Shown here: positions 3,352 through 55,863 of the stretch, in pieces
Position numbering within the stretch: position 1 is the first letter of the stretch
Layout: each line of letters opens with the position of its first letter
Assembly: GCA_907165135.1 (NCBI GenBank)
Contig: OU015570.1
Location: forward strand, 2,253,929-2,317,928
Length of the DNA stretch: 64,000 nucleotides
Origin: Oikopleura dioica
Taxonomy: Eukaryota; Animalia; Chordata
Direction of reading: 5' to 3'
Translations under genes and position numbers: made by a program
Notes under the pieces: model-generated
Database searches by the model: none
The model's input: the letters and a program-made list of their open reading frames with translations, nothing else
Told to the model about the DNA's origin: nothing

Positions 3352-3888
3352 TTGCCAAATATAAAAGTCCATAGGACGTCCGACTTGCCAAATTATCCAA
3401 CTGTAGCTCATGAAGAAGGGACCTTCAACAAACAATGCAAATTCGTCAAAACCCTTTTGGATAACACAACAAAACAAGTCAAATATAGCCAGTCTTCGAC
3501 TTTACCGCTGTTGCTGAATATACAGTTATTCAATTGGCCAAACGAATTTCTGTCATATCTGCGAAAATGTAACTGCCGAGCACGACTGTGGAAAACAAAA
3601 TTGCTAAAATTCCAATTGGCATGAATAATTGAGATAATGAAGAAAATTTCAGCGAAATCTTCAAACACAAAACACCGATATACAATCCGCGAAACGAAAT
3701 TTCGAAATACCAAAATCAAACAGATGAGCGCAGCGCAGCTCATAAATCATAAGGAAGCAATTGTGAAAGCGTCGAGCAAGGAGCACACGCACCGCGACTC
3801 GTCCGCCGTTACCCCGACGGGGAAACCCCCTCCTCAAAATGTACCTACGAAAATTCAGAAAAATGGAAAAACGTCAGCTTTTATTTAA
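3352..3888 (+). pseudogene. Element A ORF3, basic protein of unknown function with one in-frame TGA
   Basis: Track ORFs 3352-3624 and 3637-3888 share a frame across TGA 3622-24; same position and size class as element B ORF3. Confidence 0.4.
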
Positions 3889-3923
3889 AATATTTCGAAA
3901 AAAAAGAGCATATTACGAAGAAA

Positions 3924-5028: not shown

Positions 5029-5222
5029 TGTGAGGTTCGCCAAGCTCCTTATTTGGTCATTCTCGATTTACGTCGGACCGCCCGCTGTCCAGCTGCAAAA
5101 AGCCGGCTCTCGCCCTGCCCTTTTCACCGACTGTCACTTTCTAACCAATTTGTTTTCCGCGAATACAAAAATTACGCTAAAGCTACTTGAATTCCTTATT
5201 TGATTACTTGGCAATCCTAACA
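5029..5222 (+). repeat. 5' LTR of element E
   Basis: Direct repeat of 7433-7626. Confidence 0.95.
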
Positions 5223-5247: not shown

Positions 5248-6278
5248 ATGGAGAGATACATCAAAGACATCGCCGAGTTGGAAAAAGCTATTGCAGAGCT
5301 GGAAGGACTAGCGACTCCACCTGAACAATCGATAAAATACCTGAGAAAAGCGATGAAAGATCTCAAACCGACGGACCACATATCAGTTAAGTCAGAAAGT
5401 ACTCAACAAGTAGCATTAACTTCTCAATACACGGGCAGGCGACTAAGCGCTCAAAACACGGGGTCGGGAAAACCGACCACCAAGCATTATTCAGCCCGCG
5501 CGGCGCGCCAAATTCGGAGTGTGAAAAACAGCGCCGACTATTTTGATCTCTCATTCATTTTTCCGTCGAGATAATTAGTTCAAAACTCTACTGTTAGAAA
5601 GCCTGAACACTAAGCTATTTACTCATGTTATTATCAAGGAGAAATAACATTTCAATTTTTCGATAATGAGCTCGAAAGAGATCTGGTGCAAAGCGCCATC
5701 CCTCTTGAAAAATTTCACGAAACTTTGCAGAGTGGTTCGGTTTGTTCATATAAGTGCACATTGCAAAAATTAGGTCAAACGGATTACCACATTTGAAGTA
5801 ATTGAGGGCCAAAGTCGCCGTGGTCGGTTTTACCGACCACGTGTATTGAGAAGTTAAGGAAATCCTGCGAAAATGCCCTTGATAAACTGGAATTGGAGGC
5901 ACATGATTACGAGGAGGTTTCTCAATTCTGCGCCACCGTAGACAAAATAAGAGCCAGCTACGGAGGCATCTGCGACGAGGAATTCATCAGAATGGTAGTC
6001 TTGCGCTTCGGTACTGACGCCTACGCTAGATATGAAGCGAGCGGGAAAGATCATGGAGATTTGGCGAAATTGAGAGATTGGATTTTGGTCGAGTTCAGCA
6101 GCGGTCTCTCGGTGCTTTAGCTGATTGGACGAGCGCTCGATGCACCATTCGAAACCGCGCGCGGATGGAAACATTTTTCAATTTTGATAGAAAACAGGCT
6201 GAAATGCGCGGAAGCAGCGATTTTGAGGAAAATAAGAGAAAAGAAAATCGCCGAGGGTAAACCGAGAGAAGAAGCGCG
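5248..6278 (+). pseudogene. gag: gag-like ORF of element E, interrupted by a TTAA MITE and a TAG
   Basis: Removing 5420-5857 joins ...QQVAL to RKSCENALDKLELEAHDYEE... in frame; the frame stays open after TAG 6118-20; first ORF after the PBS. Confidence 0.65.
5420..5853. mobile_element. 434-bp TTAA-targeting (piggyBac-like) MITE
   Basis: 14-bp TIR CTTCTCAATACACG; TTAA at 5416-19 and 5854-57; excision restores the gag frame. Confidence 0.85.
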
Positions 6279-7316
6279 ACATGTGAATACCGCGCAAGAA
6301 GAAAGGGATCATACGTTCAGCCAGCAACTCCGCCATTGAAACATGTTCTCAAGGGCAACCGGCCCTTCGAGGTGATTTATTGCGATTATGTCCACATGCC
6401 GCCCGGTAAAACGGGAAAACATTACATTTTGACTATACAAGATTGATTCTCTCGGTTTTTGTATACAACTCCTCAAGCTAGGAATAGAGCGATAGATGCG
6501 GCACGAGGACTCTACACTTTCATGCTTCAGTACGGTTTCCCGCGAGTTTTATCGTCGGACAAGGGTCGCTATTTCATCTCAACAGTGATCAAGGACTTCG
6601 CAAAACTTTTGGGGATACGGCAGACTCTCCACTGCAGCTTCCGACCGCAGAGCACAGGTACGCTCGAAAGAGCTCATCGGGTTCTTAAGAACAGCTTATG
6701 GGCCCTTGTTAACGATACAGGGTGCGATTGGGAAGAGGCGCTGCCGTCAGTGACATCATGGATGAACAGAGGCTACAATAAAGCAATCAAATCTTCTCCT
6801 TGGAAAATTATCTATGGCTACGACTACAACGATTCTGGACTACGAGTTCCGACCAGCACAGAGAAAGAGATGAACCCGAACCAGTACGCAAAAAGACTGC
6901 GGAATACACTATCAGCAGCGCATAAAATGGTTAAACTCGCGCAAGAAGAAGCAGACCTTGCTATGGGCGCAAAGAAGCCACATTACACTCCAATAAGTAT
7001 CTCACCGGGCGACCAGGTATATTTGAAGCGAGAGGTAAGCGCCGAGGCTAAACGAACGCATCAGCCCTACATCGGGCCCTACAAGGTATTGAAATGCAAT
7101 AGCTGCGTGCTGCTCATCGAGATCGACGGAAAAACGGAGTTTGTGCATAGAGGTCATGTTGTGAAACGACTGCAGCGCGCCGCCCAGCAGGACGACGATC
7201 TTCTCGAGCTCATGGACATCGAGGAAAAACCGCCAGACAAAATTGCCCCACCTCTCCGCAGAAGTGGTCGAGTGAGGAAGCCAATTGATTGCCTCGGAAT
7301 ACGCCCAACGAGTTAA
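6279..7316 (+). pseudogene. pol: Integrase of element E (DDE core + GPY) with in-frame TGA at 6444-46
   Basis: RPFEVIYCDYVHMP...LTIQD*FSRF...SSDKGRYF...GTLERAH...YIGPYKV. Confidence 0.9.
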
Positions 7317-7432
7317 TAGTCGAGGTATTACTCTTCCTTACATGTTTTCATCGTTTTATTTATCACCGATCACCGATACTTCGCCGCCTTTTTACAGCAT
7401 TCGACGACTCTCATCTGCGCTGACCGGAGGGC

Positions 7433-7626
7433 TGTGAGGTTCGCCAAGCTCCTTATTTGGTCATTCTCGATTTACGTCGGACCGCCCGCTGTCCAGCTGC
7501 AAAAAGCCGGCTCTCGCCCTGCCCTTTTCACCGACTGTCACTTTCTAACCAGTTTGTTTTCCGCGAATACAAAAATTACGCTAAAGCTACTTGAATTCCT
7601 TATTTGATTACTCGCCAATCCTAACA
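7433..7626 (+). repeat. 3' LTR of element E
   Basis: Direct repeat of 5029-5222. Confidence 0.95.
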
Positions 7627-7930
7627 TAAGTTAGCTGCTTCTGCCTTTGACACACAACACAACACACTTTTGTAAACTTCTAAAAACACCAATACACTTT
7701 TTATCAAGCTCAAACCAACCGTCTTGTAGTTTTTATATGCATAAAACCACTACAAGGTCAGGATGCCGAGCCCAGCGCAGCTCAGTTTGCCGAGCCAAGA
7801 GCTCACGTCAGTGATTGCTGAAATGTCCTTCTCAGCTCAGCTCAATTCAATATTTTTCTGAGAGAACCAGCTCAGCTCCCATGTGAGAAATTGTAACAAT
7901 AAACCCTTGTAAATGTGGGTCTTCCGACAA

Positions 7931-8001
7931 GTTAGTATAGCTGAGTGGTTAGTGATCCCCTTAGTGAGTGGCGGGCGCGAGCTCGATACCTCTTTTCTAA
8001 C
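7931..8001 (+). other. Degenerate tRNA-like / SINE-head sequence
   Basis: 71 nt; A-box TAGCTGAGTGG, B-box-like GAGCTCGATACC, acceptor-like GTTAG/CTAAC pairing, followed by T7; anticodon and T arms pair poorly. Confidence 0.35.
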
Positions 8002-9689
8002 ATTTTTTTCAGCATGAGTCCTTCGATGACGTCATGCAAGAGAGCCCCGCGCCTCGATTAACAAGGGTGCCATCGTTTTACCGATTAAATTTTTTTTTGC
8101 TGCGCCATCGTTTTATTGAGTAACTAACTCAAAAGTGCCAGCGTTTTATCGAGTAACAAAGGGTCGCTGGAATATCAATCGCGCTGGTCGTTAGTGCGCT
8201 TGCAAAAATCTCAGCGGGAATCATGCGCTCGTGTAGTAGGTCGGGCGCACTAGGAGACAAGCATTTATCCCTCGATAATCAAATAAAGAAATTCTGCCAT
8301 GAGACTTAAAGAGATTACTATTATAAAGTAAACAACGGGCTTTTCAATGAATGAAATAACAGACTGATAAACTTCGTATTTTGAGGAAAAAAAGGGGCAA
8401 AACCTAATTACCTGAAGAGTTTAGTCTGTGACCAAATTTTCAGTGATATCGGCTCACTTTCACAGGCTTGAGAGAGGAAGGAAGAGCTGCGCGCGCTTTT
8501 GTAAAAATGGGTACACTTTCACCGGCCAAATGACTGGCTTTACATTATCGTTTTCTAATTTTTTAATGTTTCCGAATTAGTTCAAACGATTATCTAGCAT
8601 TCTATTTAATTAGAATTTCGATATCAATTCTAGTTCTCCCTAAATCAATCGCCACAAAATTGGACGTTTTGATCTGTGAAGCGCCGCGCTTATCGCTTTT
8701 TCACACCGGAAGAGAAAAAGTACAATTTCTTCCGGGGTTTTCGAATACGCTGATTCGATAAACATAAAATAAAAAAGATCCAAGAAATTTTACTCTTACA
8801 CGTTAATTTTGATTTATTTTTTCCATCGCGGAAGGGTTCAAACTTTTCTCTGGCATAAAAAAATCTTAAACAACCCATCTAAAGGTAACTCTACGACGTC
8901 AATACTGGCCGAAAATTGTTGTTGATACCCTTTATCTTAATTTTCTTAGAAATCATTGAAAATTTTAACTCATTCCTTTCCTTACTTCAGCCGAGTACTT
9001 CTTGATTTTTCTTTTACAGCAGGCTCTCTTTCAGAAAAACGAGCAGATCAATTTTTTAAAATTTTTGAAGAAAAGTTCCTTCATTTTTAATCCATATTTA
9101 AGCAGGAAAATCGCCAAAAGAGGGCGTTTTTCACCCAGAGAATCAGTAAAACAGATGAACAGGGAAGAAAGACGTCCCGCTGTGTGCATTCTAGTTATCA
9201 GAGTTCCAAATCAGCCATGAACGGCTGCTCCTGCCCCCAATCCGTCGGTAATTTTCTTGTCTCAGTTCAACTTGCCCCGAAAACTCTTTTATTTTTAATT
9301 ATGTAGACTTTAAATAATAGTTTATTGACTATAATTACCATAATTATAAGAAAAAGAATTGCCTTGTTTAGCAAATTTGTCGAAAATTCGTAATTTATGT
9401 ATTAAAAATGTCAAAATCACCATTAATTTAATATATTTCATTCATTCTTAATTTCATTTTCAAGTGAGGGCGCTTTTTTTACGCCGCGCTCTGATTGGCG
9501 CGCGCTCGGCAAATCTCCGAGCTTGGGGGAGTGTGGTTGGTGTTGTACGCCTCAGAAGATACACGCCTCGCGCTAAATCTCGGTCTGATGGAGCCTCAAA
9601 TCCAGATTTTTCACCACCTAAAAAGTGAGAGCGCAACGAGAGTTCTGCCAAACAAAATGGTTCTGTCAACAGAATTATTTCGAAGGCCG

Positions 9690-11908
9690 GCCGGTATTTT
9701 CGGCCAAGGCCTCTGGCGAAGCCCTGCTCAAATCCTGCTAAAAATTACAGTGAGAAATTCTTTTGTGGGGGCCCCGACGGAGCCCTACACGAATTCTGCC
9801 AAGAGGCAAGAATAAGGATTAATTTGCGCGGGCCTTGAAAGAGTGCTGCGGAATTTTTGGTCGAAGAGTGATTTTTGAAGAGATTTTTGGCTGCGGCCCT
9901 GGCGGAGCCCTGCGCAAATTATGCTGAGAAGGCACATTTAAAACTAATTTAAGGCCGGACCCCGACAGAGTCCTGCCCAAATTTTGCCGAGAGGCATAAT
10001 TAACTAAATTTTTAGCCGGGCTCAGGCGGAGCCCTGCAGAAGTTTGCCAAGGAGGCCAATCAAAACTTTATTTTTGAGCAGGCCCCGGTGGAGCCATTCA
10101 AAATTTTTTTGCCAAGAAAGCCCATTTTAACTCGTTTTCCGGCCGGGCCACGAATAAGTTCTGCAGAATTTTCCCCGAAAAGGCTCATTTCAACTTGATT
10201 TTTGACAAAAAGGTTAAAAGTTTGTCCACAAGAAAGCATCGTTTTTGCTCAAAACGCATTAGAGCTGTTATGTTCCTGCCAAAAACTCTCGGTTTTACGC
10301 GAAAACGTGATTTTCATGATATTTATGCCTTAGCTTCGGCTAAGCCCAGGATTTATAGAAAAATGAGCCACTTCCTTCAACAAACCCCCGCGGAGCAAAT
10401 TGATTAAAAGGGCACCGGAGCTCCCGAAAATTACGTCAATTGATCATATTAAGATACGATTGCAACCCCTTAAACCCCAGAAATTATGAGTGAACAAGGC
10501 AGCAGTGTCACGGGTAAGATTTCACAAAGAAAAATCATTAATGAACGGTCCTGGGCTTTGCTAATCAATTCAAAATGGATAACTGCGAGCTTTCCCGTGG
10601 AACCGACTATCAAATCCGACAATTCTCATCTAAATACGAAACGCAACGGCAACGTCGGCAGAACAAACGATCGTTCGCAAATTATGGCATGTCTCAAAGA
10701 ACCTCTTGTTGCCGAAAAGCGGTAATACGCCAAAAATCCTTCTCTCGGCAAAACTTTCTTTAAACTCAGTAGACGACGGGAATAATAAGTATATGTTGCA
10801 ATCAATCTTCTTTAACATTATTTATCAAGCCTAACAACCTCATTAAGCAAAAAAAGGCTTCAGAAGCACGTGACAAATCAAAAAAGATCTCTGTCTTCAA
10901 AAGAATGCTGCCATTTACCGCCACTGCTGTTACATAAATTCCAGGCTTGCCAAGATTATCAAAAAGGAAGAACATAAGGCAATTTTAATTTTGAATATAT
11001 TTATTTACACTGCGAAACCCGAAAATGGATTCTCAAAACAACGAATCAAAATCTACCTAGACTGAACCCGATGTCGTGTTTTTCCGTCCTCAGCCGGAAA
11101 CTAACAGATCCAATTCAAAATGGACTCAAACTGACGCCCCTCCGTCTGAACAGCCATCTCCGAAAAAGGCGAAAACCAACGATGAGGCACGCGGCCCTGA
11201 ACAAAACTCACTCGTTAGTCGAGCAAAATTTTGAGCGATCATCTGGCAAGATGCCGAGAAAATCGACTTTTGGGAACACTATTGTCGGAATCGCCTCTGC
11301 TTCAAAAATGCGCGCGAATCTGGTTTTACAACAAAGCAGCTCATCAGCCTACATCTCCTTACACTAAGACGGCAGGATGTTTTTGTCGACGAAGTGATTG
11401 GACAAGACGAGCGCAAGGACTTTGATACGTATTTGGAATCGGTTAGGAGGTTTCTGAATAACACAAGAACAACTGCATTTGGGGAGATACTGAAAGTAAA
11501 ACGAAAACCCCAAGAAACCTTTATACAATTATTCATACGAATATGTGAAATATGCCGTTACAAGGTTGGAAAAGAATCAAAATCACTGGCAACTTTGATA
11601 TACCCGACTCCTCTCGAGATCTGCATGCCGTTGGAAAAGATGGAAATGACACGGGTGATCGAAGCCGCTGAACAACTCGACTTTGAAACCCTCAGAACAG
11701 CGGTCAAAAAAACTCTTATTTGGACGGCATAGGTAATATTCGTTTGCGACTGCTACAGAATTAAAAATTATTTTCGGCACTTTGGATCAGCGAATCAAGC
11801 GGATCTGGATCTTCTTTAAGAGGCAATCGAAAATCACGCTTCTGCACTGAGTGAACCTTCAAAGAAAGGGGCACGAGCGGCCTTGACGACTACTTTTGTG
11901 AGTTGGAA
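9690..11908 (+). mobile_element. Older degenerate copy of family C internal region (leader array, deleted ORF1, ORF2 with stops)
   Basis: Reverse-complement similarity to ~17250-20290; ORF 11394-11732 closely matches the C-terminal half of 17423-18130. Confidence 0.85.
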
Positions 11909-12247
11909 TGTTGTAATATGCTTCCTCATTTATGACTTCTATGTACTAAGCTAAGTTCCTGCTAAGTAAGCATACTACTTTTGTATTGACGGTAATTCGG
12001 TGTTTATTTGTGATTCTGGGGCAAGGCCAGAATGAGGGAAAATGGGCATGGTCAGGCACTTTTATAGGAGCGCTCGCTCACAAGTCTCACTTCGAGTTCG
12101 ACTTTATTTCTGAGCTGCAGTTCCGAGTTGAGTGATGAGCTCGCGCTTCGCAGTTGGTGCTCGCGCTCGCCCCTCAGCTTCGGATTCTGTGAGCTTGGCT
12201 CGAGACTCGACTTTCGTTTTTGTAATCATAAGTTATGGACCATAACA
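11909..12247 (-). repeat. 3' LTR of element C
   Basis: Direct repeat of 20874-21212; on the minus strand CTATAAAA precedes AATAAA. Confidence 0.95.
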
Positions 12248-12260
12248 CTTTTCCCCCCTT
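12248..12260 (-). other. Polypurine tract of element C
   Basis: Minus strand AAGGGGGGAAAAG abutting the 3' LTR. Confidence 0.9.
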
Positions 12261-12289
12261 GCTGGCAAAATAAAATTGAGTTCAGGTTA

Positions 12290-12556
12290 CAGCTACAGTA
12301 AAGTTTAACGATGAGCTTCAGTAAAGATTAACGTTGAGCTACAGTAAGGTTTAACGTTGAGCTACAGAGAAGATTAACGTTGAGCTACAGTAAGGTTTAA
12401 CGTTGAGCTACAGTAAAATTAGACGTTGAGCTACAGTAAGGTTTAACGTTGAGCTACAGAGAAGATTAACGTTGAGCTACAGTAAGGTTTAACGTTGAGC
12501 TACAGTAAAATTAGACGTTGAGCTACAGTAAGGTTTAACTTTGAGCTACAGTAAGA
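12290..12556. repeat. 23-bp tandem array (~12 units) with 92-bp higher-order structure
   Basis: GAGCTACAG-N8-ACGTT-type units; variants in the order A-B-A-C-A-B-A-C-A. Confidence 0.95.
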
Positions 12557-12620
12557 GATAAAATGTTCTTAGTCGAAAAATTTGATGGGCTGTTGCTTCT
12601 GTTTGAGGTCTTCTTCCCAC

Positions 12621-13178
12621 CTATTCTTCCCCTCCTTCAGCCAGTGTCGTTGAGTTGAAGTTGTTATGCTGCAAAGCCATCGTAAGAAATGCCATCCTTG
12701 AGCATCTGCAAAGTATGCATTTTCATGTAAGGCGAGCGAATTGTACGGCGCATTCAGGATGAAAGGAGTGAAGGCAGCGCAGTGTTATTGTGGGGTTACC
12801 CTTTCGACAAATCGGGCATAAACGGCCGTTTGTATGATTCTCCATGTGTGTGGTAAAGAGACGAAGTCCCATCGAGTCCCAGCAAGCAGGACAATGATCA
12901 TATTTTTGGCATCGCTCAAAGAAGCAGTTTATATGAAGAAAGTGCCCACATTTTGCTTTGATACCCATCTTCATACTTGATTCACTGTCTCGCGTTGAAC
13001 AAATAACGCAGACTTCGTCAGGGTTTGGCGTTACTATTCGGCATCCTTCGACGAAAACGAACATGAAAGTTGTTGTAACGAGCCAATTGATGGGTGTTTC
13101 TACGGCTTTTCTATTGACAGAGCTTGTTCTACCGGCGCTTTCAAGGTAACCACTCGAAAAATCGTTTCGGTTACTCAT
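12621..13178 (-). CDS. Tandem RING-H2 (E3 ligase-like) protein; in-frame TGA at 12723-25 inside the second RING
   Basis: RING1: CVIC-x16-CGHFLHINC-x10-CPAC. RING2: CPIC-x10-CLHSFHPEC-AVQFARLT*K-CILC. The frame stays open to TAG at 12621. Confidence 0.8.
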
Positions 13179-16100
13179 GATCTGAATCAGAGTTTTGGTA
13201 GTTTAGATAGAAAATTTCATCGTTCAAGCTTTGTTACTTCAAGAGAAGAGCTTTTAGCGAAAATTGTGTTTAAAAGAACTGTTACAGTAAAAATGAAGTT
13301 CAGTTTTCCGTAAAAAAACTTGCGTTTTCGGAATCTGTCTTTAGATGCCGTAAATCGATGTTTTAAACGGTATCTCAGAATATCCCTTTTTTTTTAAAAG
13401 CTCATCGATCATGCTACCGTTTTTTTTTAAATGAGCCCATTGAATTGAACTTACAGTTAATCAGTGTTAAACTACAGAATGATAAGTGGAATCCTTAATG
13501 GTTCAGTTTTTCTGTAATCGGATTCAACTTTTTTTATGAATCAGTCTTTCATGAGAGTCCATGATTCTTGTTGTCCATATTTTCTGATTTCCATGAGATT
13601 TTTGAAAAAGACAGACGTCAGCTAAATATTTTCTACTTTAAATCGTTTAAATTCGAGAAATGGAGGTTTTGGCTCTCAAATATGGCTAATTTTTTCAAAG
13701 AGGAAGAAAAAGGGAATGAATGAAAGAACTTTTTAAATGAATATTTATCTTATGGGTACGGCTATCGATTTTGAATGGGGCTTATTCTGATTGTTGAAAA
13801 TACTTAGTTATTTCCTGAATTAAAGGGGCTTCCGTGAGTTTTTTGGTGAAATGAGTCTCGTACGGACCAAAATTTTGGAGAAATCTGTATAAAGGCTATT
13901 TTTCATTAAATCAAATGATCTAAGGGGGAAGAGCCCGATAAAGATTCCTTATTTTGCATTTTCCGAGAATCAGGTTCGCGCGGACCAATTATCTTGGTGA
14001 CACCCTAAGTTGATTTGAATTGCTGTTTCGAAAAAGCATCCATTTAGCTTTTATCAATACTGTTAAGGGTTTTTGGATCATTCAAGAAAGATAAGAAATT
14101 CAATTATTGAGCCTCTTCAGAGGACTGACTAGGTAAATTTTACTTATTTCCTCACAAAGAAAGCAGAATTTGAATTTACAAAGTCGATTTTCGTTAATAT
14201 TTGAGATTGCGCTCTAAAGATTCTGTTATAAAAATTTCTACCGTCACCTGAGCTACAGTCGAAATTCGTAAAGAAGAATTTGAAATCGATTGATTCAAAA
14301 GCGGGGGTGGGGGTCCTTAAGTCGAAAATCTTCAATAATTGAACATTATTTTCATCAGTGGGTATTTAGATTGGTTCTGAGAAACAAAGATCAAGTTCAT
14401 GCAATCAATGTTGGTAACCTTAATATTCGGCCGATTTGCACGTTTTATTGAAGCCCGTGATCTGCGCTAGAATTGACCCTCCCAGAGTTATTCGAGCGTT
14501 ACGGTGGTGTTCTTCACTACAGTTCGCTCCAAATTATTTTATTGGCCGTAAAATTTTGAACTTCTCCTTTTCCGCCTTGACCTCTTTATTTTTATGGTTT
14601 CTGCCTGAGCGCTTCAACCGAGTTTCTGAATTTCAGAATTTCTCATTTTGAAAAATCGGTCAAAAAGAAAGGCCGTGAAAATGATTTTTTCAAAACTAGA
14701 GGTTTAAAGAAGAAACGCAAAGAAAGAATAAGATGGAAGACGAATTTTTGAAAACATCTAAAGTAAGTCGGGAGCAATTCTATTTAAGCACATTTTCGGA
14801 CTTAGTAAAATTTAAGGGTTTATATTCCTTTTAGATTTTCCGGATTTGGCATTTTCCGAAAATGAAATTTTCACGAGTCAAAAGTTTCAAATTATCTTAC
14901 TCTAACCTTCAGTTTCATAACTAAAAGGGGCGACTCTAAAATGGCCAATAAGAAATTCATTCCATAATTTGGGGGCCTAAATTTTCTTAAATTCAACGAA
15001 CTTAAAATGCAAGAATTTCATTTAAAAATCGACTGAACCCAAAGGGTTTTGCGCTCATAATTAAAGTAAGCCTCCATCTTTAAGGATACCCCTAACAATT
15101 TTCCATTGAACTACGACTCCCGATTCGAATCGTCATTTCAAAGATTCGGTTCAAGAATATCAGCAGGGAACAAGCACTCGAAATTATGGTTGCATCAAAA
15201 ATTCTCCAGGTCACGTGACCTTCACGAGTATCATTTTAAATAAATAGAATCGTTTGATAATCCCTAAAACCTGGAATGAGCAGAAATATTTGGCACTAGT
15301 TAAGATTTATGTTACCGTTAATGCGAACTTTTTCTTGGCTTGATTTGGGTGGGTCAAAAGTTATTTACCATTTCTAATTTGGACAATTATTAGGCACGCT
15401 CCATTAGCTCTTAGTCTCGAGAGAACTGTAAGTGGTCATAAGCGCTGGTTAAAAGTTGCGCTTTTCAAAAAAACATTTCCCGGTCGTTTTAAATTCCGGT
15501 CCCCGGAATACGACCAAAAGTAAATAAGCTTTTTCACCGACTCAGGTCTTTCATGTGACTCGAAGTCGATAATTTTTCTTTGAGATTATTAACTTTTTCA
15601 TAAGTTGTTACAAAAGCCATTTCTCCTCAAATTTTCCTGATGGCTGTCATATTACTAATTGCTTTTAAATTAAAATATTAACTATCAGTTTTTCACCTTG
15701 AATACTTTTATTCTTAAAGATATTTGTTTTCATCAAGCGCTGACTTTTATTCGCGTCCTATCACAATCGTATTCAAAAATGATTAAAATTCCGTTTGAAC
15801 TTATAATTTGAGCTGATTTGCTCACGCTTTGTGGTTTATTTATTTACTGATTTCTAACGCGAAAAGAAATCGGTGGGCTCATTCCTTCCCACAGACGTTC
15901 AGAGATTTTTTAAAGTGAATCTCCATGGGCCCCCTTTCGTGTAGTGAAATGGCCAAACGTCATTTACAGGGTGCTTTAGGCTCCCTGGCAGTATACGGAG
16001 ACCAACTGCCCTCCAAATGGAATCCCTATTATGTTAAATACCTTTACTTAGCGTGAGACCACATGCATGATCCATGCGTATGGCTAAGTTATCTTTTTCT

Positions 16101-16383
16101 TTGCCTATCCCTCTGCAAGGTGATTACTTCATCTGTCACCGGTCTACAGTTTACCAGCGAAAACGTAAAAATAAGGCTAATGCCGAAAACATTTTTACAT
16201 CGCAAAACTTTCAGAGGTTAGTTCAGCTTAGATTTTGAGTTTTTCATGATTCTTGATCATTATTCGTTTTTTTTTTTTCAAATTTAATTGCATCAGTTTG
16301 CGCTTGATAAAATCATTTCATAATGTCATGATAATTACTATACTACTGTCTTTGTTGTTTGTAAATAACCCTTTACATACCTT

Positions 16384-16854
16384 TTATGTTGTTTTCGTTC
16401 GAGTTTTTGAAGGAGTCGTTTTGGCGTTGGGGCCTTCCTTCATTTTTTTCATCTTTTTTCGGCGTTGTTCTGTCGTTATGATGAGATCGTTTCGTAGCAC
16501 GTCGCAAGCCCAACTGTGTTGCGATTTCTCAGGCAGTTTGCGCTCAAAACGTTTCATCTTGGATCAATGTCGAATCCTTTCTGCTTGTTTCATCTTTTCC
16601 ATGCTGCCAATGGAGAAACTTTCGGCTTTATTTGGAATAATCCCGTCTCCAAGCTGAAGTTTAAGAATCATTTTGGACACTTCGCCTTTTTCTGCCGATT
16701 TACCAAGCTAATTCTGTTGTTTCTTTGTCAATCATATAGTTTTTTCTGTCCTCGGTTATCAACATCGAGATCGGCAGGGCTTTATCTTCCAAGCACCCAA
16801 GGTTGTTTACTTCGAAACATTCCAAGTTTCAGTGTCCACCGCTTTTCGAGCCAT
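16384..16854 (-). pseudogene. Decayed ORF inside element C
   Basis: About 107 codons with one TGA (LGKSAEKGEVSKMILKLQLGDG...RIRH*SKMKRFERKLP...KTRTKTT*); the 5' part has several stops. Confidence 0.3.
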
Positions 16855-17422
16855 AGTGTCGTTTAATCACTCAGAATTAGCAATTACCCGGCCGGGTTTT
16901 GCCCTTGCGATTTCCGGGATTCTGTGCACCAAGCGTGTACGTTGTTGGGGGACTGAAATCGCCCTCGAAAAGCCCAAGCAGAGTTCGTGTTCCAGATTAA
17001 GGTTCGCTCAATCGTTTCGACCAGTTCAATTTTTTTCTTAAATTCAATTTGTTACATTAACCGTCAAATTTGGTTGAATTTAAGGGAAAGCGGGAGGATC
17101 ATAGGTTTCAGAACAATATGGATTTTTCGCGTCGCCAGGATCGAACATCTTCTTTTTTCCTAAAGCAGGCGGGACTCAGGACCCTTCGCGGTTGATCAGA
17201 CCAGGTCCAGTTTCCCGGAGGTGGCGTAGATGCTAGGCTTCCAACTCACAGAGCACTCGTCAAAGCTGCTCGTGCCAGGCAATTTGAAGATTTCACTTAT
17301 TGCAGAAGCGCAGTTTTGGCTCGCTTCTTTGAATGTAGAGATCCAGATCCGCATGATTCGTAATTGTCCAATGTGCCGAAATGTATTTGATTTTTGTTAG
17401 AAGCAGTCGCAAGCGACTGTGC

Positions 17423-18130
17423 CTAAACCGTCCAAATAAGGGTTTTTTTGACCGCTGTTCTGAGAGTTTCAAAGTCGAGTTGTTCAGCGGCTTCGATCAC
17501 CCGTGTCATTTCCATCTTTTCCAACGGCATGCAGTTGTCGAGAAGAATCGAGTATATCAAAGTTGCCAGTGATTTTGGGTCTTTTCCAACCTTGTAACGG
17601 CATATTTCACATATTCGTATGAATAATTGTATCAAGGTTTCCTGGGGTTTTCGTTTTATTTTCAGTATCTCCCCAAATGCAGTTGTTCTTGCGTTATCCA
17701 GGAATCTCCCAATTGATTCCAAATACGTATCAAAGTCCTTGCGCTCGTCTTGTCCAATCAACTCGTCGACAAAAACATCCTGCCGTCTTAGTGTAAGGAG
17801 GAGTAGGCTGATGAGCTGCTTTGTTGTAAAACCAGATTCGCGCGCATTTTTGAAGCAAAGGTGATTCCGAGAATAGTGTTCCCAAAAGTCGATTTTCTCG
17901 GCATCTTGCCAGATGATCGCTCCAAATTTTGCTGGACTAACGAGAAAATTTTGTTCAGGGCCGCGTGCTCCATCGTTGGTTTCCGCCTTTTTCGGAGATG
18001 GCTGTTCAGACGGAGGGGCGTCAGTTTGAGTCCATTTTGAATTGGATCCGTTGGTTTCCGGCTGAGGGCGAGAAAACATGACATCGGGTTCAGTCTGGGT
18101 AGATTTTGATTCGTTGTTTCGACAATCCAT
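17423..18130 (-). CDS. Element C ORF2, Gag/capsid-like protein (235 aa)
   Basis: Intact ATG ORF; QLISLLL...QDERKDFDTY...KRKPQETL resembles element B Gag DLISVAL...EEEKKNWESF...QRGQETQ by eye; conserved in the older copy. Confidence 0.55.
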   Translation of the reverse strand: MDCRNNESKSTQTEPDVMFSRPQPETNGSNSKWTQTDAPPSEQPSPKKAETNDGARGPEQNFLVSPAKFGAIIWQDAEKIDFWEHYSRNHLCFKNARESGFTTKQLISLLLLTLRRQDVFVDELIGQDERKDFDTYLESIGRFLDNARTTAFGEILKIKRKPQETLIQLFIRICEICRYKVGKDPKSLATLIYSILLDNCMPLEKMEMTRVIEAAEQLDFETLRTAVKKTLIWTV

Positions 18131-18369
18131 TTTCGGGTTTCGCAGTCTAAATAAATAGATTCAAAGTTAACATTGCCTTCTGTTCTTCCTTTTTGATAAT
18201 CTTTGCAAGCCTTGAATTCTGTGAAAGCAGTGACGTTTAACGGTTGCAAATTGTGGAAGACGAAGTTCTTTGTTGATAAGCTCGGTGCTTCTGAAGCCTT
18301 TTTAGCTTAATGAGGTAGTTAGGCTTAATAATTAATGTTAAGTTACATTGATTGTAACACTTACTCATG

Positions 18370-18987
18370 CTATCCCCGTCGGCGACTCAGTTTTTCAGGA
18401 AGCTTTGCCGAAAGGGGTATTTTACGCGTATTTGATCTTGTAGGGTAGGGGAGGTTTCTTTGTGGCTGGCCATTGATTGCGAACGCTCGTTGTACCCGCC
18501 GTTGTTCTCGCTGTGCTTCGTATTCAGATGCGAATTGGCGGAGTCGATGGTCAGTTGTACGACAAAGCTCACAGTTATCCAGGTTTGAATTGAGCAGCAG
18601 AGACCAGGTCCGTTCATTGTTGATTTTTCTAAAGAAAAACCTTGCCGTTTGCTTTTGGGCTGCGTAAAGAGAAATGTAGTTCGTCCGGATGCGGCGAAAT
18701 TCAATTGCGATGATAAAATGCCATTCTAGCAGCTCATCAAGCGTAGTTGGCGCAGGGCTGGTTTCAAGGATTCTTTCAAGATTTCTCAGAGCTGTTCTTG
18801 GTGAATAATTCGGCAGGGCTGAAGAGTTAGCCGTTCTTTGAATCATCACTACGATTGAGCCGATAATTCCGTCACTTTCCGATCGATGGCCAATCGGGTA
18901 TCGTTTGCCGGCGAGTGCGTCGGGAATCAATTCGAGATACATTTGTTTTATTCTATTCGTGACGTTGCTGCCTTGGTCCACACTCAT
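18370..18987 (-). CDS. Element C ORF1, unknown 205-aa protein
   Basis: Intact ATG ORF directly after the leader array; the homologue at 10486-10790 carries an internal deletion. Confidence 0.6.
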   Translation of the reverse strand: MSVDQGSNVTNRIKQMYLELIPDALAGKRYPIGHRSESDGIIGSIVVMIQRTANSSALPNYSPRTALRNLERILETSPAPTTLDELLEWHFIIAIEFRRIRTNYISLYAAQKQTARFFFRKINNERTWSLLLNSNLDNCELCRTTDHRLRQFASEYEAQREQRRVQRAFAINGQPQRNLPYPTRSNTRKIPLSAKLPEKLSRRRG

Positions 18988-19399
18988 TATTTCTCGTCTT
19001 TATTGTGTTGCAATCGTATCTAAATATGATCAATTGTCGAGATTTTCCGAGAGCTCCGCTGACTCTTTAATCATCGAGCTCCGCCGAGGTTTTCACGGAG
19101 GAGGTGCACTTTTGGCTGTTAATCAAGGGCTTAGCCGAATGCCAAAGCTAAGACCTAAAGAACACATTTTTACGTAGGAAATCGAGAAATTCTGGCTGAA
19201 GAATAACAGCGTATATGCGTTTTGAGCAAAATCGATATTTTCTTGTAAACAATTTTCAAACCTATCTTTTTTTGGCGAAAATTTGGGAACTCTGCCTCTA
19301 ATTACAGCTAAATTTTTGTTAAAGGCAATTTTGGTTAATTTTGAGCAGAGTTTTGCTGACGGAGGAGCAAAAATACATATTTAAGATGGCCCTTTTGTC

Positions 19400-20290
19400 A
19401 AAAATCGAGAACTTCGCTTGAGGCCGCAGCCAAATTAAATTAAGACCGGCGAAATTGGCAAAAAATCAAGGGCTCCGCTGGAGGCCGGGGCCGAAATAAC
19501 TTAAGATAGGCTAATTGGCAACAAAGTCTAGGGCTCCGCCGAAGCCAGCCAAAAAATCAATTTGAAATGAGCCTTTTCTGCAGAGCTCCTTCGGGGCCCG
19601 GCCGTAAAACGAGTTAAGATTGGTCTTCTTGGCATAACTTCTGCATGGCCCGGCCAAAAATCAATTTAAGATGGGCCTCTTCGGCAAAATTCTGCAGGGC
19701 TCCGCCGGGGCCCGGCCGAGAATCAAGTTAAGGTCTGCCTTTTCGGCAAAAATTCTGCAGGGCTCCGCCGGGGCCCGGCCGAGAATCAAGTTTAGATGGG
19801 CCTTTTCGGCAAAAATTCTGCAGGGCTCCGCCGGGGCCCGGCCGAAAATCAAGTTAGATGGGCCTTTTCGGCAAAATTCTGCAGGGCTCCGCCGGGGCCT
19901 GCTCAAAAATAAGTTTTAATGGGCCTTTTGGCGAAACTCTGCAGGGCTCCGCCGGGGCTTGGCCGAAAATCAAGTAAAATTGGCCTTTTCGGCAAAAATT
20001 GGGCAGGACTCCGTCGGGGTCCTGCCTTATTTTTAGTTTTAAATATGCCTTCTCGGCAAAATTTTGCGCAGGGCTCCGCCGGGGCCGCAGCCAAAAATCA
20101 TTTTCAATACGCCACTTGGCAGAAAAATCATAAAAGCTCCGCCGGGGCCCGCGCAAAAGTCCATCTAGATCGCTTTATTGGCGAAAGTTGGGCAGGACTC
20201 CGTCGGGGTCCGCCTCAATTTTAGTTTTAAATTTGCCTTTCTGGCAAAATTTTGCGCAGGGCTCCGCCGGGGCCTCGGCCAAAAAATTTC
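19400..20290. repeat. ~60-63-bp GC-rich tandem array in the 5' leader of element C
   Basis: CAGGGCTCC recurs at 19695, 19758, 19821, 19882 and 19942; an inverted diverged copy lies at ~9690-10200. Confidence 0.9.
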
Positions 20291-20859
20291 TTTAAACCTA
20301 GCAATCGCCCTTACCCCGACCCGAAGACCTCTCCTAAAGGCGTGTCTATCGGATAGCCCCTCTAAGAGCGAGCTCCCGATCCTTACACACAGCCCTGGAG
20401 GTAAGCCTTTCTCCAGCAAAAAGAGCTTGCGACCCGTTAACGAAATTTACCTCACTCAGAGCGTAACGAGCGTACATTCGGAAAGTGGTCCGCCCCAGCC
20501 GAAACATCCTTCAGGCAGACCCTGCCGGGCCCTAGGGATCACATGGCCGTCTCATCGTGGTGGTAAACCCGTATCCCCTTTAGTTTTTTTTTGGACTAAC
20601 CTGGTTTTGGCGGCTTCTACTGTGGAGCTTGAAAATCGCGAAAATTCTTTCTTTGCTGTGTCTTCTATCTCGGGATCGGCGGAAATGGCGCAAATTTCGG
20701 ATTTCCAAATCGTAATTACCCATATTCGTTGCGCATTCAGCCATGACTGCATAGATTCGTAGAATCAGGTGCTATTTTTGTTGACAGCAATGATTGATCG
20801 GGAATCGTACCAACGGTCATCAATCAGGATCGGAGCAGCAGGCGGGCAGGTTCGTCAAT

Positions 20860-20872
20860 ACTTCTGACACCA
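20860..20872 (-). other. Primer-binding site, tRNA-Leu(CAA) type
   Basis: Minus strand TGGTGTCAGAAGT, 1 nt from the 5' LTR; complementary to ...ACUUCUGACACCA (recalled tRNA sequence). Confidence 0.85.
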
Positions 20873-20873
20873 A

Positions 20874-21212
20874 TGTTGTAATATGCTTCCTCATTTATGA
20901 CTTCTATGTACTAAGCTAAGTTCCTGCTAAGTAAGCATACTACTTTTGTATTGACGGTAATTCGGTGTTTATTTGTGATTCTGGGGCAAGGCCAGAATGA
21001 GGGAAAATGGGCATGGTCAGGCACTTTTATAGGAGCGCTCGCTCACAAGTCTCACTTCGAGTTCGACTTTATTTCTGAGCTGCAGTTCCGAGTTGAGTGA
21101 TGAGCTCGCGCTTCGCAGTTGGTGCTCGCGCTCGCCCCTCAGCTTCGGATTCTGTGAGCTTGGCTCGAGACTCGACTTTCGTTTTTGTAATCATAAGTTA
21201 TGGACCATAACA
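20874..21212 (-). repeat. 5' LTR of element C
   Basis: Direct repeat of 11909-12247. Confidence 0.95.
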
Positions 21213-21630
21213 GGAAGCCTAAGAAGCCGCGACATGCTCAACGTGACCTGGTCTGATCAACTGAGTCCTGCGTGCTTAAGGAAGAAAGAAGTCGCCCGGG
21301 CCTTGCGCCAAAAAGTCATCCTTTTTGTACTGAACTGAAGATCCTTATCCTTTGACACTTAAATTTTACCAAATTACACGGTAAAATTAACAAATGGAAC
21401 TCTGAGACATAATGAAGTCGAAACAATACAGCTGACTGGAATCATCAATATGAACTCTGCTTGGGCTTTACGAGGGCGTTTTTTAGTCCATCAACAACGT
21501 ACATGATTGATGCACAGAATCCCGGAAATTGCAAGGGCAAAAACCTGCGCAGGTAATTGCTAATTCTGAGTGATTTCCAAATTTTTCCCTGTAGCACTGA
21601 AGATTCCGTAATGGCGAAAAGCTTCTGCGA
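21213..21630 (+). mobile_element. Continuation of the older family-C copy beyond the insertion
   Basis: Matches the reverse complement of ~16840-17245, e.g. GCACAGAATCCCGGAAAT(T/C)GCAAGGGCAAAA and GGTAATTGCTAATTCTGAGTGATT. Confidence 0.8.
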
Positions 21631-26306: not shown

Positions 26307-26992
26307 TATTATTTTATTGAAGTCAAGCAACGATCAATTACTATTTTTGAGCTTGATGTACCTGTTATACATTAATTTTGACAACAGATTTGAAATCTAC
26401 AGCCCAAAATTAGTATGTGCTGTAATTTTCAAGTCTATCCGCCCAGTAGTTTTCTTAAGTGCAGTGGAATGCACCTTCTGTCCCAGCACCTCTACCCGGC
26501 GATCTGGCCCATGCGGTTAATGCACCATGTATGGTGCACAGCAATTATAGTGCCGACACCTCTGAATGTGTTTTTGGCCGGTAGGCTAAAATTTTCCGAA
26601 AAATTCACCATATAATCTCCCTCTTCAAATTCGATGTCTGTATCCGATGTAGAAACCCAAACCCAAATCCGAGCCAACTTTTACATTAGTATTGATTTTT
26701 CTTGGTCCAAACTTCCTGTTGTCAAGTTTTTGTAGCAATTTGAACCTTCGGACGCATAAGGAAGCAAAATAAGGGTTTTTAAAAATTTCAAATTTTTAAA
26801 ATCTGTATACCTGATTCGACTCGAAGTTTCCAACTTAAGAGGACTTTTGCTCAGTCCTTGTAATCTCAAAAGGCCTCTTAAGATGGAAAAAAAACTTTTC
26901 AATATTGGTCTTCCAGCAGCTTGTCTTCCAGCAGAGTGGTCCTTCGCGAGGTCCTCCGGCACCCAGTGGCCGAGGTCGGCCTTAAGTATTTA

Positions 26993-27638
26993 TAGGCATA
27001 ACGCACAAAAAATTCAACTTTTTCCCTGTAATAGATACAAGTTTGAAACTTTGGGAGCAACTAAAACACCAAAAATGACTTTTCAAAATTTTTTGGAAAA
27101 AATTTTTTGTTACAGTTTAGTACTTTTTTTCATCCCTTTTCTGACTACTTTTCGAGCAATCCAAGCTACGGTATTCTAAGTATGCTCATTCGAAAGAGCG
27201 GAAAAAACTGAGTCAGAATTATCAATAAAAAGGGGTTCCTGGTGGGGTTCCCTGGATTCTAGGGATGAAAAACCCCTTAAAATCAGCCAAAAGTTCATTT
27301 TCGGGGTCAAATCGGGTCATTTTTGAGTGATGACTCATCATTTTTGTGATTTTCAACCCCTTAAATCTGGGGAACCCCCCTAGGAACCCCTTTTTTTCGA
27401 TGTATCTGACTCAGTTTTTTGTGCTCTTTCGAATGAGCATACTTACAACCCCGTAGCTTGGATGGCACGAAAAATCAATTTTTTGACAACTTTGGGGTAC
27501 TAAAAAAGTACTAAATTTTAAATTTTTGAAATTTTTTTTTGTTGAAATGTTGTCAGAGCACAAAAATCTATATGATAGGTGAAAATTAGCTTCCTACGAC
27601 CTTCAGATAAAAAGTCGATTTTTTGTGCGTTATCCCTA
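26993..27638. mobile_element. hAT-type foldback MITE (long imperfect inverted arms)
   Basis: Termini TAGG(C/G)ATAACGCACAAAAAA, 8-bp TSD AGTATTTA (26985-92 / 27639-46), inner inverted block ATCCAAGCTACGG...TAAGTATGCTCATTCGAAAGAGC; a related end lies at ~670-762. Confidence 0.75.
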
Positions 27639-50109: not shown

Positions 50110-50114
50110 TATTT

Positions 50115-55844: not shown

Positions 55845-55863
55845 ATTGCTAAGCAGAAGAGAA

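What the first reader, a model, noticed from the sequence alone, without database searches (positions are those of the whole stretch)
11909..21212. Young 9.3-kb pol-less LTR element carrying a capsid-like gene and a double-RING gene
Seen: 339-bp LTRs with no visible difference, GGAA TSD, tRNA-Leu PBS and PPT, which are all the cis signals for retrotransposition. No RT, RNase H or integrase motif appears. In sense order it carries a ~62-bp leader array, orphan ORF1, Gag-like ORF2, a decayed ORF, ~3 kb of non-coding sequence, a tandem RING-H2 ORF and a 23-bp array. Known: large non-autonomous LTR derivatives (LARD-type) exist but usually lack intact genes. Inference: a satellite-like retroelement that borrows Pol from a helper while supplying its own capsid-like protein and a possible ubiquitin ligase. 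This is my best candidate for an undescribed system.
Basis: partly seen in the sequence, partly recalled or inferred. Interest (0 to 1): 0.85.

Follow-up and report, generated by a model that had tools for sequence, protein, structure and literature searches.

The report
Pol-less Tor-type retrotransposon with RING gene
This is a recently inserted, non-autonomous LTR retrotransposon of the tunicate (Oikopleura) Tor lineage that has lost its polymerase gene. It keeps a capsid-only Gag gene and a RING-finger gene, which makes it an unusual variant of a known kind of genomic parasite, not a new system.

Summary
Two 339-bp LTRs are 100% identical, and a 4-bp GGAA target-site duplication is confirmed by a paralogous empty site. 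PBS, PPT, both tandem arrays and the three ORFs are present, and no trace of pol was found.

ORF2 is a homologue of Oikopleura dioica Tor Gag (41% identity, E 4e-44). It covers only the capsid (CA) part, with a confident CA-like fold, and lacks the CCHC knuckle. An autonomous O. dioica Tor-type element (L002) has near-identical LTR tips, the same 16-nt PBS stretch and a 4-bp TSD. Its layout is upstream ORF, gag, pol, RING ORF, LTR. The candidate therefore matches that layout minus pol. It was not assembled as a new system.

RING ORFs follow pol in at least three Tor-type elements, but the candidate's RING-H2 shows only generic similarity to them. Its second finger is cut by an in-frame TGA.

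The element sits inside an older, decayed copy of its own family, so the family is multi-copy. A second pol-less, CA-only Tor derivative (L011) carries a TFIIB-like ORF. Gag-only non-autonomous LTR elements (TR-GAG) are already described.

Verdict: new variant of a known kind, moderate interest.

The parts
11905..11908 (.). Target-site duplication GGAA (left copy on the + strand)
   Evidence: The paralogous empty site shows a single GGAA.
11909..12247 (-). 3' LTR in element sense. It is 339 bp; its sense sequence starts TGTTATGGT and ends CATATTACAACA. AATAAA (reverse complement) lies at 12004-12009 and a TATAAAA-like box (reverse complement) at 12060-12066.
   Evidence: 100% identical to 20874-21212. 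The motifs were read; their function is inferred.
12248..12260 (-). Polypurine tract (sense AAGGGGGGAAAAG) abutting the 3' LTR
   Evidence: Read. L002 has an analogous purine run before its 3' LTR.
12291..12559 (-). 23-bp tandem array (11.5 copies) in the 3' untranslated part
   Evidence: It has no excess RNA structure (z = +2.3).
12624..12722 (-). 33 in-frame codons after the TGA of the RING ORF. They begin with the C-x2-C that would complete the second RING-H2.
   Evidence: Translation shown. This is a description only; the joined protein was not searched.
12723..13178 (-). RING ORF of 151 aa. It has a hydrophobic stretch, a complete RING-H2 (residues 56-99) and a second RING-H2 cut by TGA (12723-12725).
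   Evidence: Pfam zf-RING_2 at 32.3 bits against a cut-off of 27.3. Weak PDB sequence matches to the RINGs of Pirh2, HRD1/synoviolin and AMFR.
13179..17422 (-). About 4.2 kb of ORF-poor internal DNA in the place where pol sits in autonomous relatives. It includes about 33 codons of Gag-like sequence just after the ORF2 stop (to about 17324).
   Evidence: No pol found by tblastn, Tor-pol HMM or Pfam. GC falls to 0.355 at 14001-16000.
17423..18130 (-). ORF2 of 235 aa: a truncated Tor-type Gag. It has a disordered N-terminus and a two-domain capsid (CA) region, and no CCHC knuckle.
   Evidence: P0001/P0032 (O. dioica Gag AAT48676.1): E 3.8e-44, 41% identity. The Gag HMM matches positions 191-407 of 500, E 1.5e-57. 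AF2 pLDDT 88.8. Top Foldseek hits are MLV CA, PNMA2, HIV CA and Arc.
18370..18987 (-). ORF1 of 205 aa, an orphan ORF between the leader and gag
   Evidence: No Pfam hit. No similarity to Tor loci or Gag N-termini. In the older copy it carries a large deletion and frameshifts.
19400..20285 (-). Leader array of ~62-bp units between PBS and ORF1
   Evidence: Also present in the older copy at 9696-10205. The sense RNA folds better than shuffles (z = -4.9).
20858..20873 (-). Primer-binding region TTGGTGTCAGAAGTAT (PBS proper TGGTGTCAGAAGT, 20860-20872)
   Evidence: The same 16 nt follow the 5' LTR of the autonomous O. dioica element L002.
20874..21212 (-). 5' LTR in element sense
21213..21216 (.). 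Target-site duplication GGAA (right copy)
9696..11908 (+). Left part of an older, decayed copy of the same family, on the opposite strand, into which the young element inserted. It holds the leader array, an ORF1 remnant and ORF2 with two in-frame stops.
   Evidence: blastn: 10528-11908 aligns to element sense 2583-3974 at 85%. The ORF2 stretch is 93% identical. Stops at codons 12 and 70, no indels.
21213..21575 (+). Right part of the older copy, downstream of the insertion point
   Evidence: 21245-21575 aligns to element sense 4006-4348 at 75%. See also the alignment.

Best explanation
The 9,304-bp unit is a non-autonomous LTR retrotransposon of the Tor lineage. Tor elements are the Ty3/gypsy-like, retrovirus-like elements of larvacean tunicates.

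It keeps every cis signal needed for reverse transcription and integration: LTRs with conserved tips, PBS, PPT, and a TATA box and poly(A) signal in the LTR. It has no protease, RT, RNase H or integrase. It therefore moves only when an autonomous Tor-type relative in the same genome supplies Pol, and probably also a complete Gag with its nucleocapsid part.

Its gene order is ORF1, CA-only Gag, about 4 kb of spacer, RING ORF. This matches the order upstream ORF, gag, pol, RING ORF seen in an autonomous O. dioica Tor-type element, with the nucleocapsid and pol parts missing.

Shown:
- the structure
- the recent integration
- the Gag homology and capsid fold
- the absence of pol
- the cis signals shared with an autonomous relative
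- a second family copy

Inferred:
- trans-mobilisation by a helper
- co-assembly of the CA-only protein into helper particles
- any E3-ligase role of the RING protein
For: - Identical 339-bp LTRs and a TSD verified by a paralogous empty site.
- ORF2 matches O. dioica Gag at E 3.8e-44. Its relatives carry CCHC knuckles and sit next to RT/RNase H/integrase genes.
- The CA fold is confident: pLDDT 88.8, and the top Foldseek hits are retroviral and domesticated capsids.
- L002 is an autonomous element with LTR start TGTTATAGT, LTR end CATACTACAACA, PBS stretch TTGGTGTCAGAAGTAT, TSD CCCT and ORFs 478 aa, gag, PR-RT-RH-IN, RING 155 aa.
- blastn independently finds the shared LTR-end/PBS 28-mer at 96%.
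- No pol by three methods, with positive controls in the same window.
- An older copy of the family surrounds the insertion.
- dN/dS between the two ORF2 copies is 0.48 (dS 0.109, dN 0.052), although the older copy is already dead.
- L011 is a second, independent pol-less, CA-only Tor derivative in O. dioica.
Against: - No autonomous partner with the same LTR was seen. The only autonomous element in the window (49716-56962) has an unrelated Gag, different LTR tips and PBS, and a pol only about 26% identical to Tor pols.
- The source genome could not be searched, so copy number beyond two is unknown.
- Gag lacks the nucleocapsid knuckle, so it may not be able to package RNA on its own.
- The RING ORF carries a stop inside its second finger. 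It has no specific similarity to the Tor RING family (Tor-RING HMM E 0.011; generic hits only).
- ORF1 is not conserved in the older copy.
- The dN/dS signal is modest: 43 differences in all.
Confidence: 0.75

Rival explanations
1. It is a passive LARD-like passenger. The element is only a deletion derivative carried along by a helper. ORF1, the CA-only Gag and the RING ORF are decaying relics that contribute nothing to its spread.
For: The second RING finger is interrupted by a stop. Gag lacks NC. ORF1 is an orphan and is broken in the older copy. No homologues of ORF1 or the RING ORF were found.
Against: ORF2 is intact over 235 codons in the young copy. dN/dS against the older copy is 0.48, not about 1. 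The same stop position after CA is shared by both copies. L011, an independent O. dioica derivative, also ends its Gag after CA. This suggests the CA-only form is tolerated or favoured.
Confidence: 0.3
2. The RING-H2 gene is a host gene fragment captured by this non-autonomous family (transduction). It is not the descendant of the Tor RING accessory ORF.
For: The candidate has a tandem RING-H2, whereas the Tor ORFs have a single C3HC4 finger. The Tor-RING HMM scores only E 0.011. The best small-database hit is a RING-H2 in a probable host gene in L009, at 29% over 58 aa. The other pol-less derivative, L011, carries a different, host-like cargo: a TFIIB repeat.
Against: The position, between the pol slot and the PPT, is the same as in L002, L003 and L008/L012. 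No host homologue was found. RING domains are too short to resolve this question.
Confidence: 0.4
3. It is an assembly artefact or a rearrangement. The identical LTR pair and the inverted older copy would then result from mis-joining of repeats, not from a real nested insertion.
For: 100% LTR identity and a repeat-rich context are typical places for collapse or mis-joins. No read data were available.
Against: The junctions are exact. The older copy is split at one point. GGAA is present once in the paralogous uninterrupted sequence and twice at the flanks. The LTR ends are TG..CA, with PBS and PPT directly inside.
Confidence: 0.04

Closest known systems
Tor elements of Oikopleura dioica (Ty3/gypsy-like; Volff et al. 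2004, cited from memory and from PMC4402516 and PMC13524379). The example here is the autonomous element in L002 (OU015566.1, locus 7084-16864).
   Same: - Gag CA homology: 39-41% identity.
- LTR tips TGTTAT.GT ... CATA.TACAACA.
- Identical 16-nt PBS stretch, 4-bp TSD, purine-rich PPT.
- A long leader with an ORF before gag.
- A RING ORF between the pol slot and the 3' LTR.
   Different: - No protease, RT, RNase H or integrase.
- Gag ends after CA, with no CCHC.
- The RING is a tandem RING-H2 (second finger cut), not a single C3HC4.
- There are tandem arrays in the leader and the 3' part.
- Tor groups are defined by Pol phylogeny (PMC4402516), and that test cannot be applied here.
Pol-less Tor derivative in the O. 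dioica Okinawa Y-specific region (L011, OU015570.1; locus 6198-13896), found here
   Same: - LTR element whose aligned LTR segments are 100% identical.
- Same LTR start and PBS as L002.
- Gag that stops after CA (HMM positions 39-432), with no CCHC.
- No pol.
- One extra ORF just before the 3' LTR.
   Different: - The cargo ORF has a TFIIB repeat (PF00382, E 8.8e-7), not a RING.
- Gag is split over two frames.
- The 5' LTR holds about 450 extra bases.
- Its Gag is no closer to ORF2 than other Tor Gags are (41%).
TR-GAG elements of plants (PMC4350172). BARE-2 type gag-only parasites of autonomous LTR elements are a further comparison, cited from my own knowledge.
   Same: They are non-autonomous LTR retrotransposons that keep gag, lack pol and still appear active. 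The logic is the same: they depend on a helper's enzymes.
   Different: TR-GAGs are under 4 kb, carry a single ORF for a Gag precursor and are found in plants. This element is 9.3 kb, comes from a probable tunicate, has a CA-only Gag and carries two further ORFs.
LARD (large retrotransposon derivatives; from my own knowledge)
   Same: Large size (over 4 kb), LTR/PBS/PPT intact, no pol, long non-coding interior.
   Different: LARDs are defined as lacking coding capacity. This element has an intact CA-type Gag ORF and a RING ORF.

Membership tests
LTR retrotransposon (structural definition) | Direct LTRs ending TG..CA, flanked by a short target-site duplication | tested here: met
   339-bp LTRs at 100% identity. 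GGAA TSD verified against a paralogous empty site.
LTR retrotransposon (structural definition) | PBS directly inside the 5' LTR and PPT directly inside the 3' LTR | tested here: met
   TGGTGTCAGAAGT lies one base after the LTR. A 13-nt purine run abuts the 3' LTR. The tRNA identity was not tested.
Tor lineage (Oikopleura Ty3/gypsy-like elements) | Placement in the Tor groups by Pol phylogeny (PMC4402516) | not testable with these tools
   The element has no pol.
Tor lineage (Oikopleura Ty3/gypsy-like elements) | Gag homologous to Tor Gag | tested here: met
   The best hit of 1.84 billion representatives is the cluster of O. dioica Gag AAT48676.1: E 3.8e-44, 41% identity.
Tor lineage (Oikopleura Ty3/gypsy-like elements) | Cis signals shared with an autonomous member | tested here: met
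   LTR tips, the 16-nt PBS stretch and the 4-bp TSD are shared with L002, which encodes PR-RT-RH-IN.
Tor lineage (Oikopleura Ty3/gypsy-like elements) | Host is Oikopleura | tested here: inconclusive
   The source is not given. The only leads are two short repeats at 81-84% identity to O. dioica Okinawa DNA and the Gag hits.
TR-GAG (plant non-autonomous LTR elements with gag) | LTR element with gag but no pol | tested here: met
TR-GAG (plant non-autonomous LTR elements with gag) | Short (under 4 kb), with a single ORF encoding the Gag precursor | tested here: not met
   The element is 9,304 bp and has three ORFs. Gag lacks its N-terminal and NC parts.
LARD | Large non-autonomous LTR element without coding capacity | tested here: not met
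   It is large and pol-less, but ORF2 (CA) and the RING ORF are open.
Retroviral/retrotransposon capsid (CA) fold | Two all-helical domains resembling CA NTD and CTD | tested here: met
   AF2 on a 32-sequence alignment gave pLDDT 88.8. Of the 50 matches listed, 49 are MLV CA, PNMA2, HIV/SIV CA or Arc, with probability up to 1.00. However, E is at best 0.015 and TM is 0.3-0.54. Eight of 32 family members weakly hit Retrotran_gag_2.
Complete retroelement Gag | Nucleocapsid CCHC zinc knuckle downstream of CA | tested here: not met
   No C-x2-C-x4-H-x4-C occurs in any frame of the element. The Gag HMM match ends at position 407 of 500. Relatives have the knuckle.
RING-type E3 ubiquitin ligase | Eight zinc ligands in C3H2C3 spacing | tested here: met
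   The first finger (residues 57-99) is complete. zf-RING_2 scores 32.3 bits against a cut-off of 27.3. The second finger has six ligands before the stop.
RING-type E3 ubiquitin ligase | E2-dependent ubiquitin transfer | not testable with these tools
   This needs a biochemical assay.
Tor RING accessory ORF family (L002, L003, L008/L012; defined here) | Specific sequence similarity to the family (members are 39-48% identical, E 1e-12 to 1e-18) | tested here: inconclusive
   The family HMM ranks the candidate's RING ORF first of 240 segments, but at only E 0.011 and 9.9 bits. blastp gives generic RING matches only. The position in the element is the same.

The most novel reading that the evidence does not exclude
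Tor-lineage retroelements may carry a conserved RING accessory gene that has not been described. They may also repeatedly give rise to satellite derivatives that drop NC and pol but keep a capsid-only Gag plus one cargo gene: RING here, a TFIIB-like ORF in O. dioica.

In that reading the CA-only protein co-assembles with, or competes inside, helper particles. The RING protein would act as an E3 ligase that helps the element, for example by removing a host restriction factor or by marking Gag.
Probability: 0.2. Interest if true: 0.7.

Novelty: new variant of a known kind. Interest (0 to 1): 0.45.

Why it matters
Larvacean tunicates have very compact genomes with few retroelement families, and Tor elements are their main retrovirus-like residents.

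This finding shows a freshly inserted pol-less Tor derivative that keeps only the capsid part of Gag. RING ORFs sit after pol in several autonomous relatives. Together these point to accessory functions, and to helper-parasite relations, that are not mentioned in the Tor literature I could read.

If the RING protein is an active ligase encoded by a retroelement, it would be an unusual way for a transposon to deal with its host.

If not, the element is still a clean, datable example of nested self-insertion and of a gag-retaining non-autonomous LTR element outside plants.

Tried and rejected
- Word-indexed protein searches with ORF2, the RING ORF and the L002 RING ORF found nothing. Only the exhaustive HMMER search found ORF2's relatives.
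- Exact look-up of five window proteins: none is in the collection, so no other contigs of the source genome could be fetched.
- A back-translated scan of metagenome contigs with ORF2 gave no confirmed relative.
- An exact scan with the 22-mer spanning LTR end and PBS gave one unrelated 1-kb contig (L010) and nothing in viral contigs.
- The single-sequence AF2 model of ORF2 was useless (pLDDT 41). The alignment-based model was used instead.
- A profile search of PDB sequences with the CA alignment gave only chance hits.
- The window's own autonomous gypsy element (49716-56962) was rejected as helper. Its Gag is unrelated, its LTR tips and PBS differ, and its pol is about 26% identical to Tor pols.
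- ORF1 as the N-terminal part of Gag, or as a relative of the upstream ORFs of L002/L011: no similarity.
- LTRs or a PBS for the older copy: none detectable.
- tRNA genes to verify the PBS: none in the window or in seven loci.
- Rfam: no hits.
- The bacterial promoter/terminator scan of the LTR is not meaningful for a eukaryote.
- The RING ORF was not searched as a protein joined across its stop. Only the piece before the stop was searched. The 33-codon piece after it was only displayed.
- No spliced models were attempted.
- Volff et al. 2004, the original Tor description, is not held. I could not check whether a RING ORF was noted there.
Full report
**1. Observation**

The window holds two direct repeats, 11909-12247 and 20874-21212. 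They are identical over their whole 339 bp and end TG..CA. GGAA flanks both ends.

The element reads on the minus strand. A 13-nt purine run (sense) abuts the LTR at 12248-12260. TGGTGTCAGAAGT lies one base inside the other LTR at 20860-20872. The 22-mer spanning LTR end and PBS is unique in the window, with zero matches in shuffles.

TRF and the repeat finder confirm two arrays: a 23-bp array at 12291-12559 and a ~62-bp array at about 19400-20285. Three minus-strand ORFs stand out:
- ORF1, 18370-18987
- ORF2, 17423-18130
- a RING ORF, 12723-13178

**2. The insertion is real and the family is multi-copy**

The DNA on both sides of the element is an older, opposite-strand copy of the same family:
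- 9696-11908 aligns to element sense 917-3974 (85% over 1.4 kb, 93% over ORF2).
- 21245-21575 aligns to element sense 4006-4348.

I aligned the young element's own internal stretch with the two flanks. The uninterrupted sequence has a single GGAA (...GAGTTGGAAGCCTA...). The older copy is split exactly there, with GGAA on each side. This serves as an empty-site control within the window. It makes mis-assembly unlikely and shows a 4-bp duplication on integration.

The older copy's ORF2 has no indels but two in-frame stops. dN/dS between the copies is 0.48 (dS 0.109, dN 0.052, 233 codons). This is a modest sign of past constraint. ORF1 in the older copy has a large deletion and frameshifts. No LTR or PBS of the older copy could be found.

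**3. No pol**

- tblastn with pol proteins from three Tor-type loci and from the window's own gypsy element found nothing in the element.
- An HMM built from four Tor-type pols gave a best E of 1.2 in the element. The same HMM scored 3.6e-75 and 4.6e-45 on the autonomous element at 51.5-55.1 kb, and still 1e-15 and 1.6e-4 on degraded fragments at 6447-7313 and 2829-3281. Decayed pol of that age would therefore have been seen.
- Pfam found no domain in the ten longest sense-strand open segments of 13220-17496.

**4. ORF2 is a truncated Tor Gag**

Pfam and the word-indexed search were blank. The exhaustive HMMER search found 31 relatives. The best is the cluster of O. dioica Gag protein AAT48676.1 (E 3.8e-44, 41% identity). 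Other hits are annotated O. dioica Okinawa proteins and marine-metagenome proteins.

These relatives are 450-830 aa, carry a CCHC knuckle after the matched region and lie next to RT/RNase H/integrase genes.

A Gag HMM matches ORF2 only over positions 191-407 of 500 (E 1.5e-57). No part of the element matches the N-terminal or knuckle regions, and no CCHC pattern exists in any frame. Homology to P0001 runs about 33 codons past the ORF2 stop. Both copies stop at the same place.

With a 32-sequence alignment, AlphaFold gave a confident all-helical two-domain model (pLDDT 88.8). Of the 50 Foldseek PDB matches listed, 49 are MLV CA, PNMA2 capsid, HIV/SIV CA or Arc. Probabilities reach 1.00, but E-values are weak (0.015 at best) and TM is 0.3-0.54.

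'Capsid-like' is therefore right, but the protein is CA only.

**5. An autonomous relative with the same cis signals and a RING ORF**

Locus L002 (O. dioica Okinawa chr1) holds a complete element with:
- identical LTRs (7084-7556 and 16392-16864)
- TSD CCCT
- LTR start TGTTATAGT (candidate: TGTTATGGT)
- LTR end CATACTACAACA (candidate: CATATTACAACA)
- the same 16 nt, TTGGTGTCAGAAGTAT, after the LTR

blastn finds this junction independently (28 nt, 96%). The ORFs of L002 are a 478-aa upstream ORF with no Pfam hit, gag (P0003), a 1,169-aa PR-RT-RH-IN pol, and a 155-aa RING ORF (zf-RING_2, E 2.9e-9) just before the PPT.

RING ORFs also follow pol in L003 and in L008/L012. These are 39-48% identical to each other.

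The candidate's order (ORF1, gag, gap, RING) is therefore the order of this Tor-type architecture without NC and pol.

Sequence-level kinship of the candidate's RING with that family is not shown. The family HMM gives E 0.011 and blastp gives only generic finger matches. A separate capture of a host RING-H2 remains possible.

**6. The RING ORF**

The first finger (residues 57-99) is a complete C3H2C3. It passes the Pfam cut-off and weakly resembles the RINGs of Pirh2, HRD1/synoviolin and AMFR. A hydrophobic stretch precedes it.

The second finger has six ligands before an in-frame TGA at 12723-12725. A C-x2-C follows directly after the stop, in 33 further open codons. I describe this break only. 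The joined protein was neither built nor searched.

**7. A second pol-less derivative**

L011, in the O. dioica Okinawa Y-specific region, holds a 7.7-kb LTR element (6198-13896). The first 24 nt of its LTR are identical to those of L002, and the same PBS stretch follows the LTR two bases in, against one base in L002 and in the candidate. Its features:
- LTR segments 100% identical
- Gag HMM positions 39-432 split over two frames, no CCHC
- no pol and no RING
- a 268-aa ORF with a TFIIB repeat (PF00382, E 8.8e-7) before the 3' LTR

Losing NC and pol while keeping CA and one extra ORF has thus happened at least twice in this lineage.

**8. Mechanism**

The most likely sequence is:
- transcription from the 5' LTR (a TATAAAA-like box and AATAAA are present; their function is inferred)
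- packaging into particles made by an autonomous Tor-type helper
- tRNA-primed reverse transcription
- integration by the helper's integrase, which would recognise the conserved LTR tips and make a 4-bp TSD

The CA-only protein could co-assemble with helper Gag. Whether it aids or interferes is unknown.

The leader array folds more stably than shuffles (z = -4.9) and is shared by both copies. A role in packaging is a guess. The 3' array is unstructured.

The helper is not the gypsy element at 49716-56962. That element has a different Gag (CCCH finger), different tips and PBS, and a pol about 26% identical to Tor pols.

**9. Comparison and novelty**

Gag-retaining non-autonomous LTR elements are described in plants (TR-GAG, PMC4350172). 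Tor elements are described in Oikopleura with gag, pol and often env (PMC4402516). That paper mentions no RING or zinc-finger ORF. The original description (Volff et al. 2004) was not available.

The element fails the TR-GAG criteria of size and single ORF, and the LARD criterion of no coding capacity. I file it as a new variant of a known kind: a Tor-lineage non-autonomous element.

The source organism is not given. The Gag hits and two short repeats at 81-84% identity to O. dioica DNA suggest a larvacean, probably an Oikopleura. That is inference.

**10. Limits**

- The source genome could not be searched, so copy number, the helper and RING conservation across copies are open.
- The tRNA-Leu assignment is from memory.
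- Nothing in the window looked human.
- The element is a provirus-like element of an animal.

Noticed in passing
window 49716-56962 (+): A complete, apparently autonomous Ty3/gypsy element. It has identical 394-bp LTRs, TSD TATA, a 422-aa Gag with a CCCH (not CCHC) zinc finger, RT, RNase H-integrase, and about 1.6 kb of further ORFs (55326-56950) before the 3' LTR that have no Pfam hit. Its pol is only about 26% identical to Tor pols.
   Followed up: partly
L004 11035-12144, L005 7831-8982, L006 7928-8692: Marine-metagenome gypsy-like elements whose Gag CA is distantly related to ORF2. In the env position they carry a 3' ORF that matches the COE1 DNA-binding domain (PF16422, E 2.8e-8).
   Followed up: no
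L011 12424-13230: A 268-aa ORF with a TFIIB repeat (PF00382, E 8.8e-7) inside a pol-less Tor derivative in the O. dioica Okinawa Y-specific region. It may be a captured host gene.
   Followed up: partly
L002 15437-15904; L003 5818-6267; L008 16892-17194; L012 16848-17207: A conserved family of C3HC4 RING ORFs (39-48% identity) lies after pol in Tor-type elements. None is in the protein collection searched, and the Tor paper I could read does not mention them.
   Followed up: partly
window 5029-5222 and 7433-7626, with ORF 6459-7316: A 194-bp direct repeat pair (98%) flanks an ORF that matches the integrase part of the Tor-pol HMM (E 1e-15). It is probably the remnant of another LTR element.
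   Followed up: no
window 62736-63486 and 27149-27473: Two long self-complementary (palindromic) stretches: 765 nt at 88% and 336 nt at 73%.
   Followed up: no
window 59158-59948 and 38277-38616: Two further tandem arrays: 57-bp units over about 0.8 kb and 30-bp units over about 0.34 kb.
   Followed up: no
window 26690-26796 and 62269-62348: Two short stretches are 81-84% identical to O. dioica Okinawa chr1 DNA (L002 1038-1146, L008 4768-4847). They are probably a shared small repeat family and give a hint to the source organism.
   Followed up: no
L008 and L012: Two O. dioica Okinawa loci, on chr1 and in the PAR, carry near-identical DNA. It includes a Tor-type gag-pol-RING unit, a second Gag-like segment upstream (about 6421-7180) and a RING-H2 segment at about 20.8-21.1 kb. 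No LTR pair was found within 22 kb.
   Followed up: no
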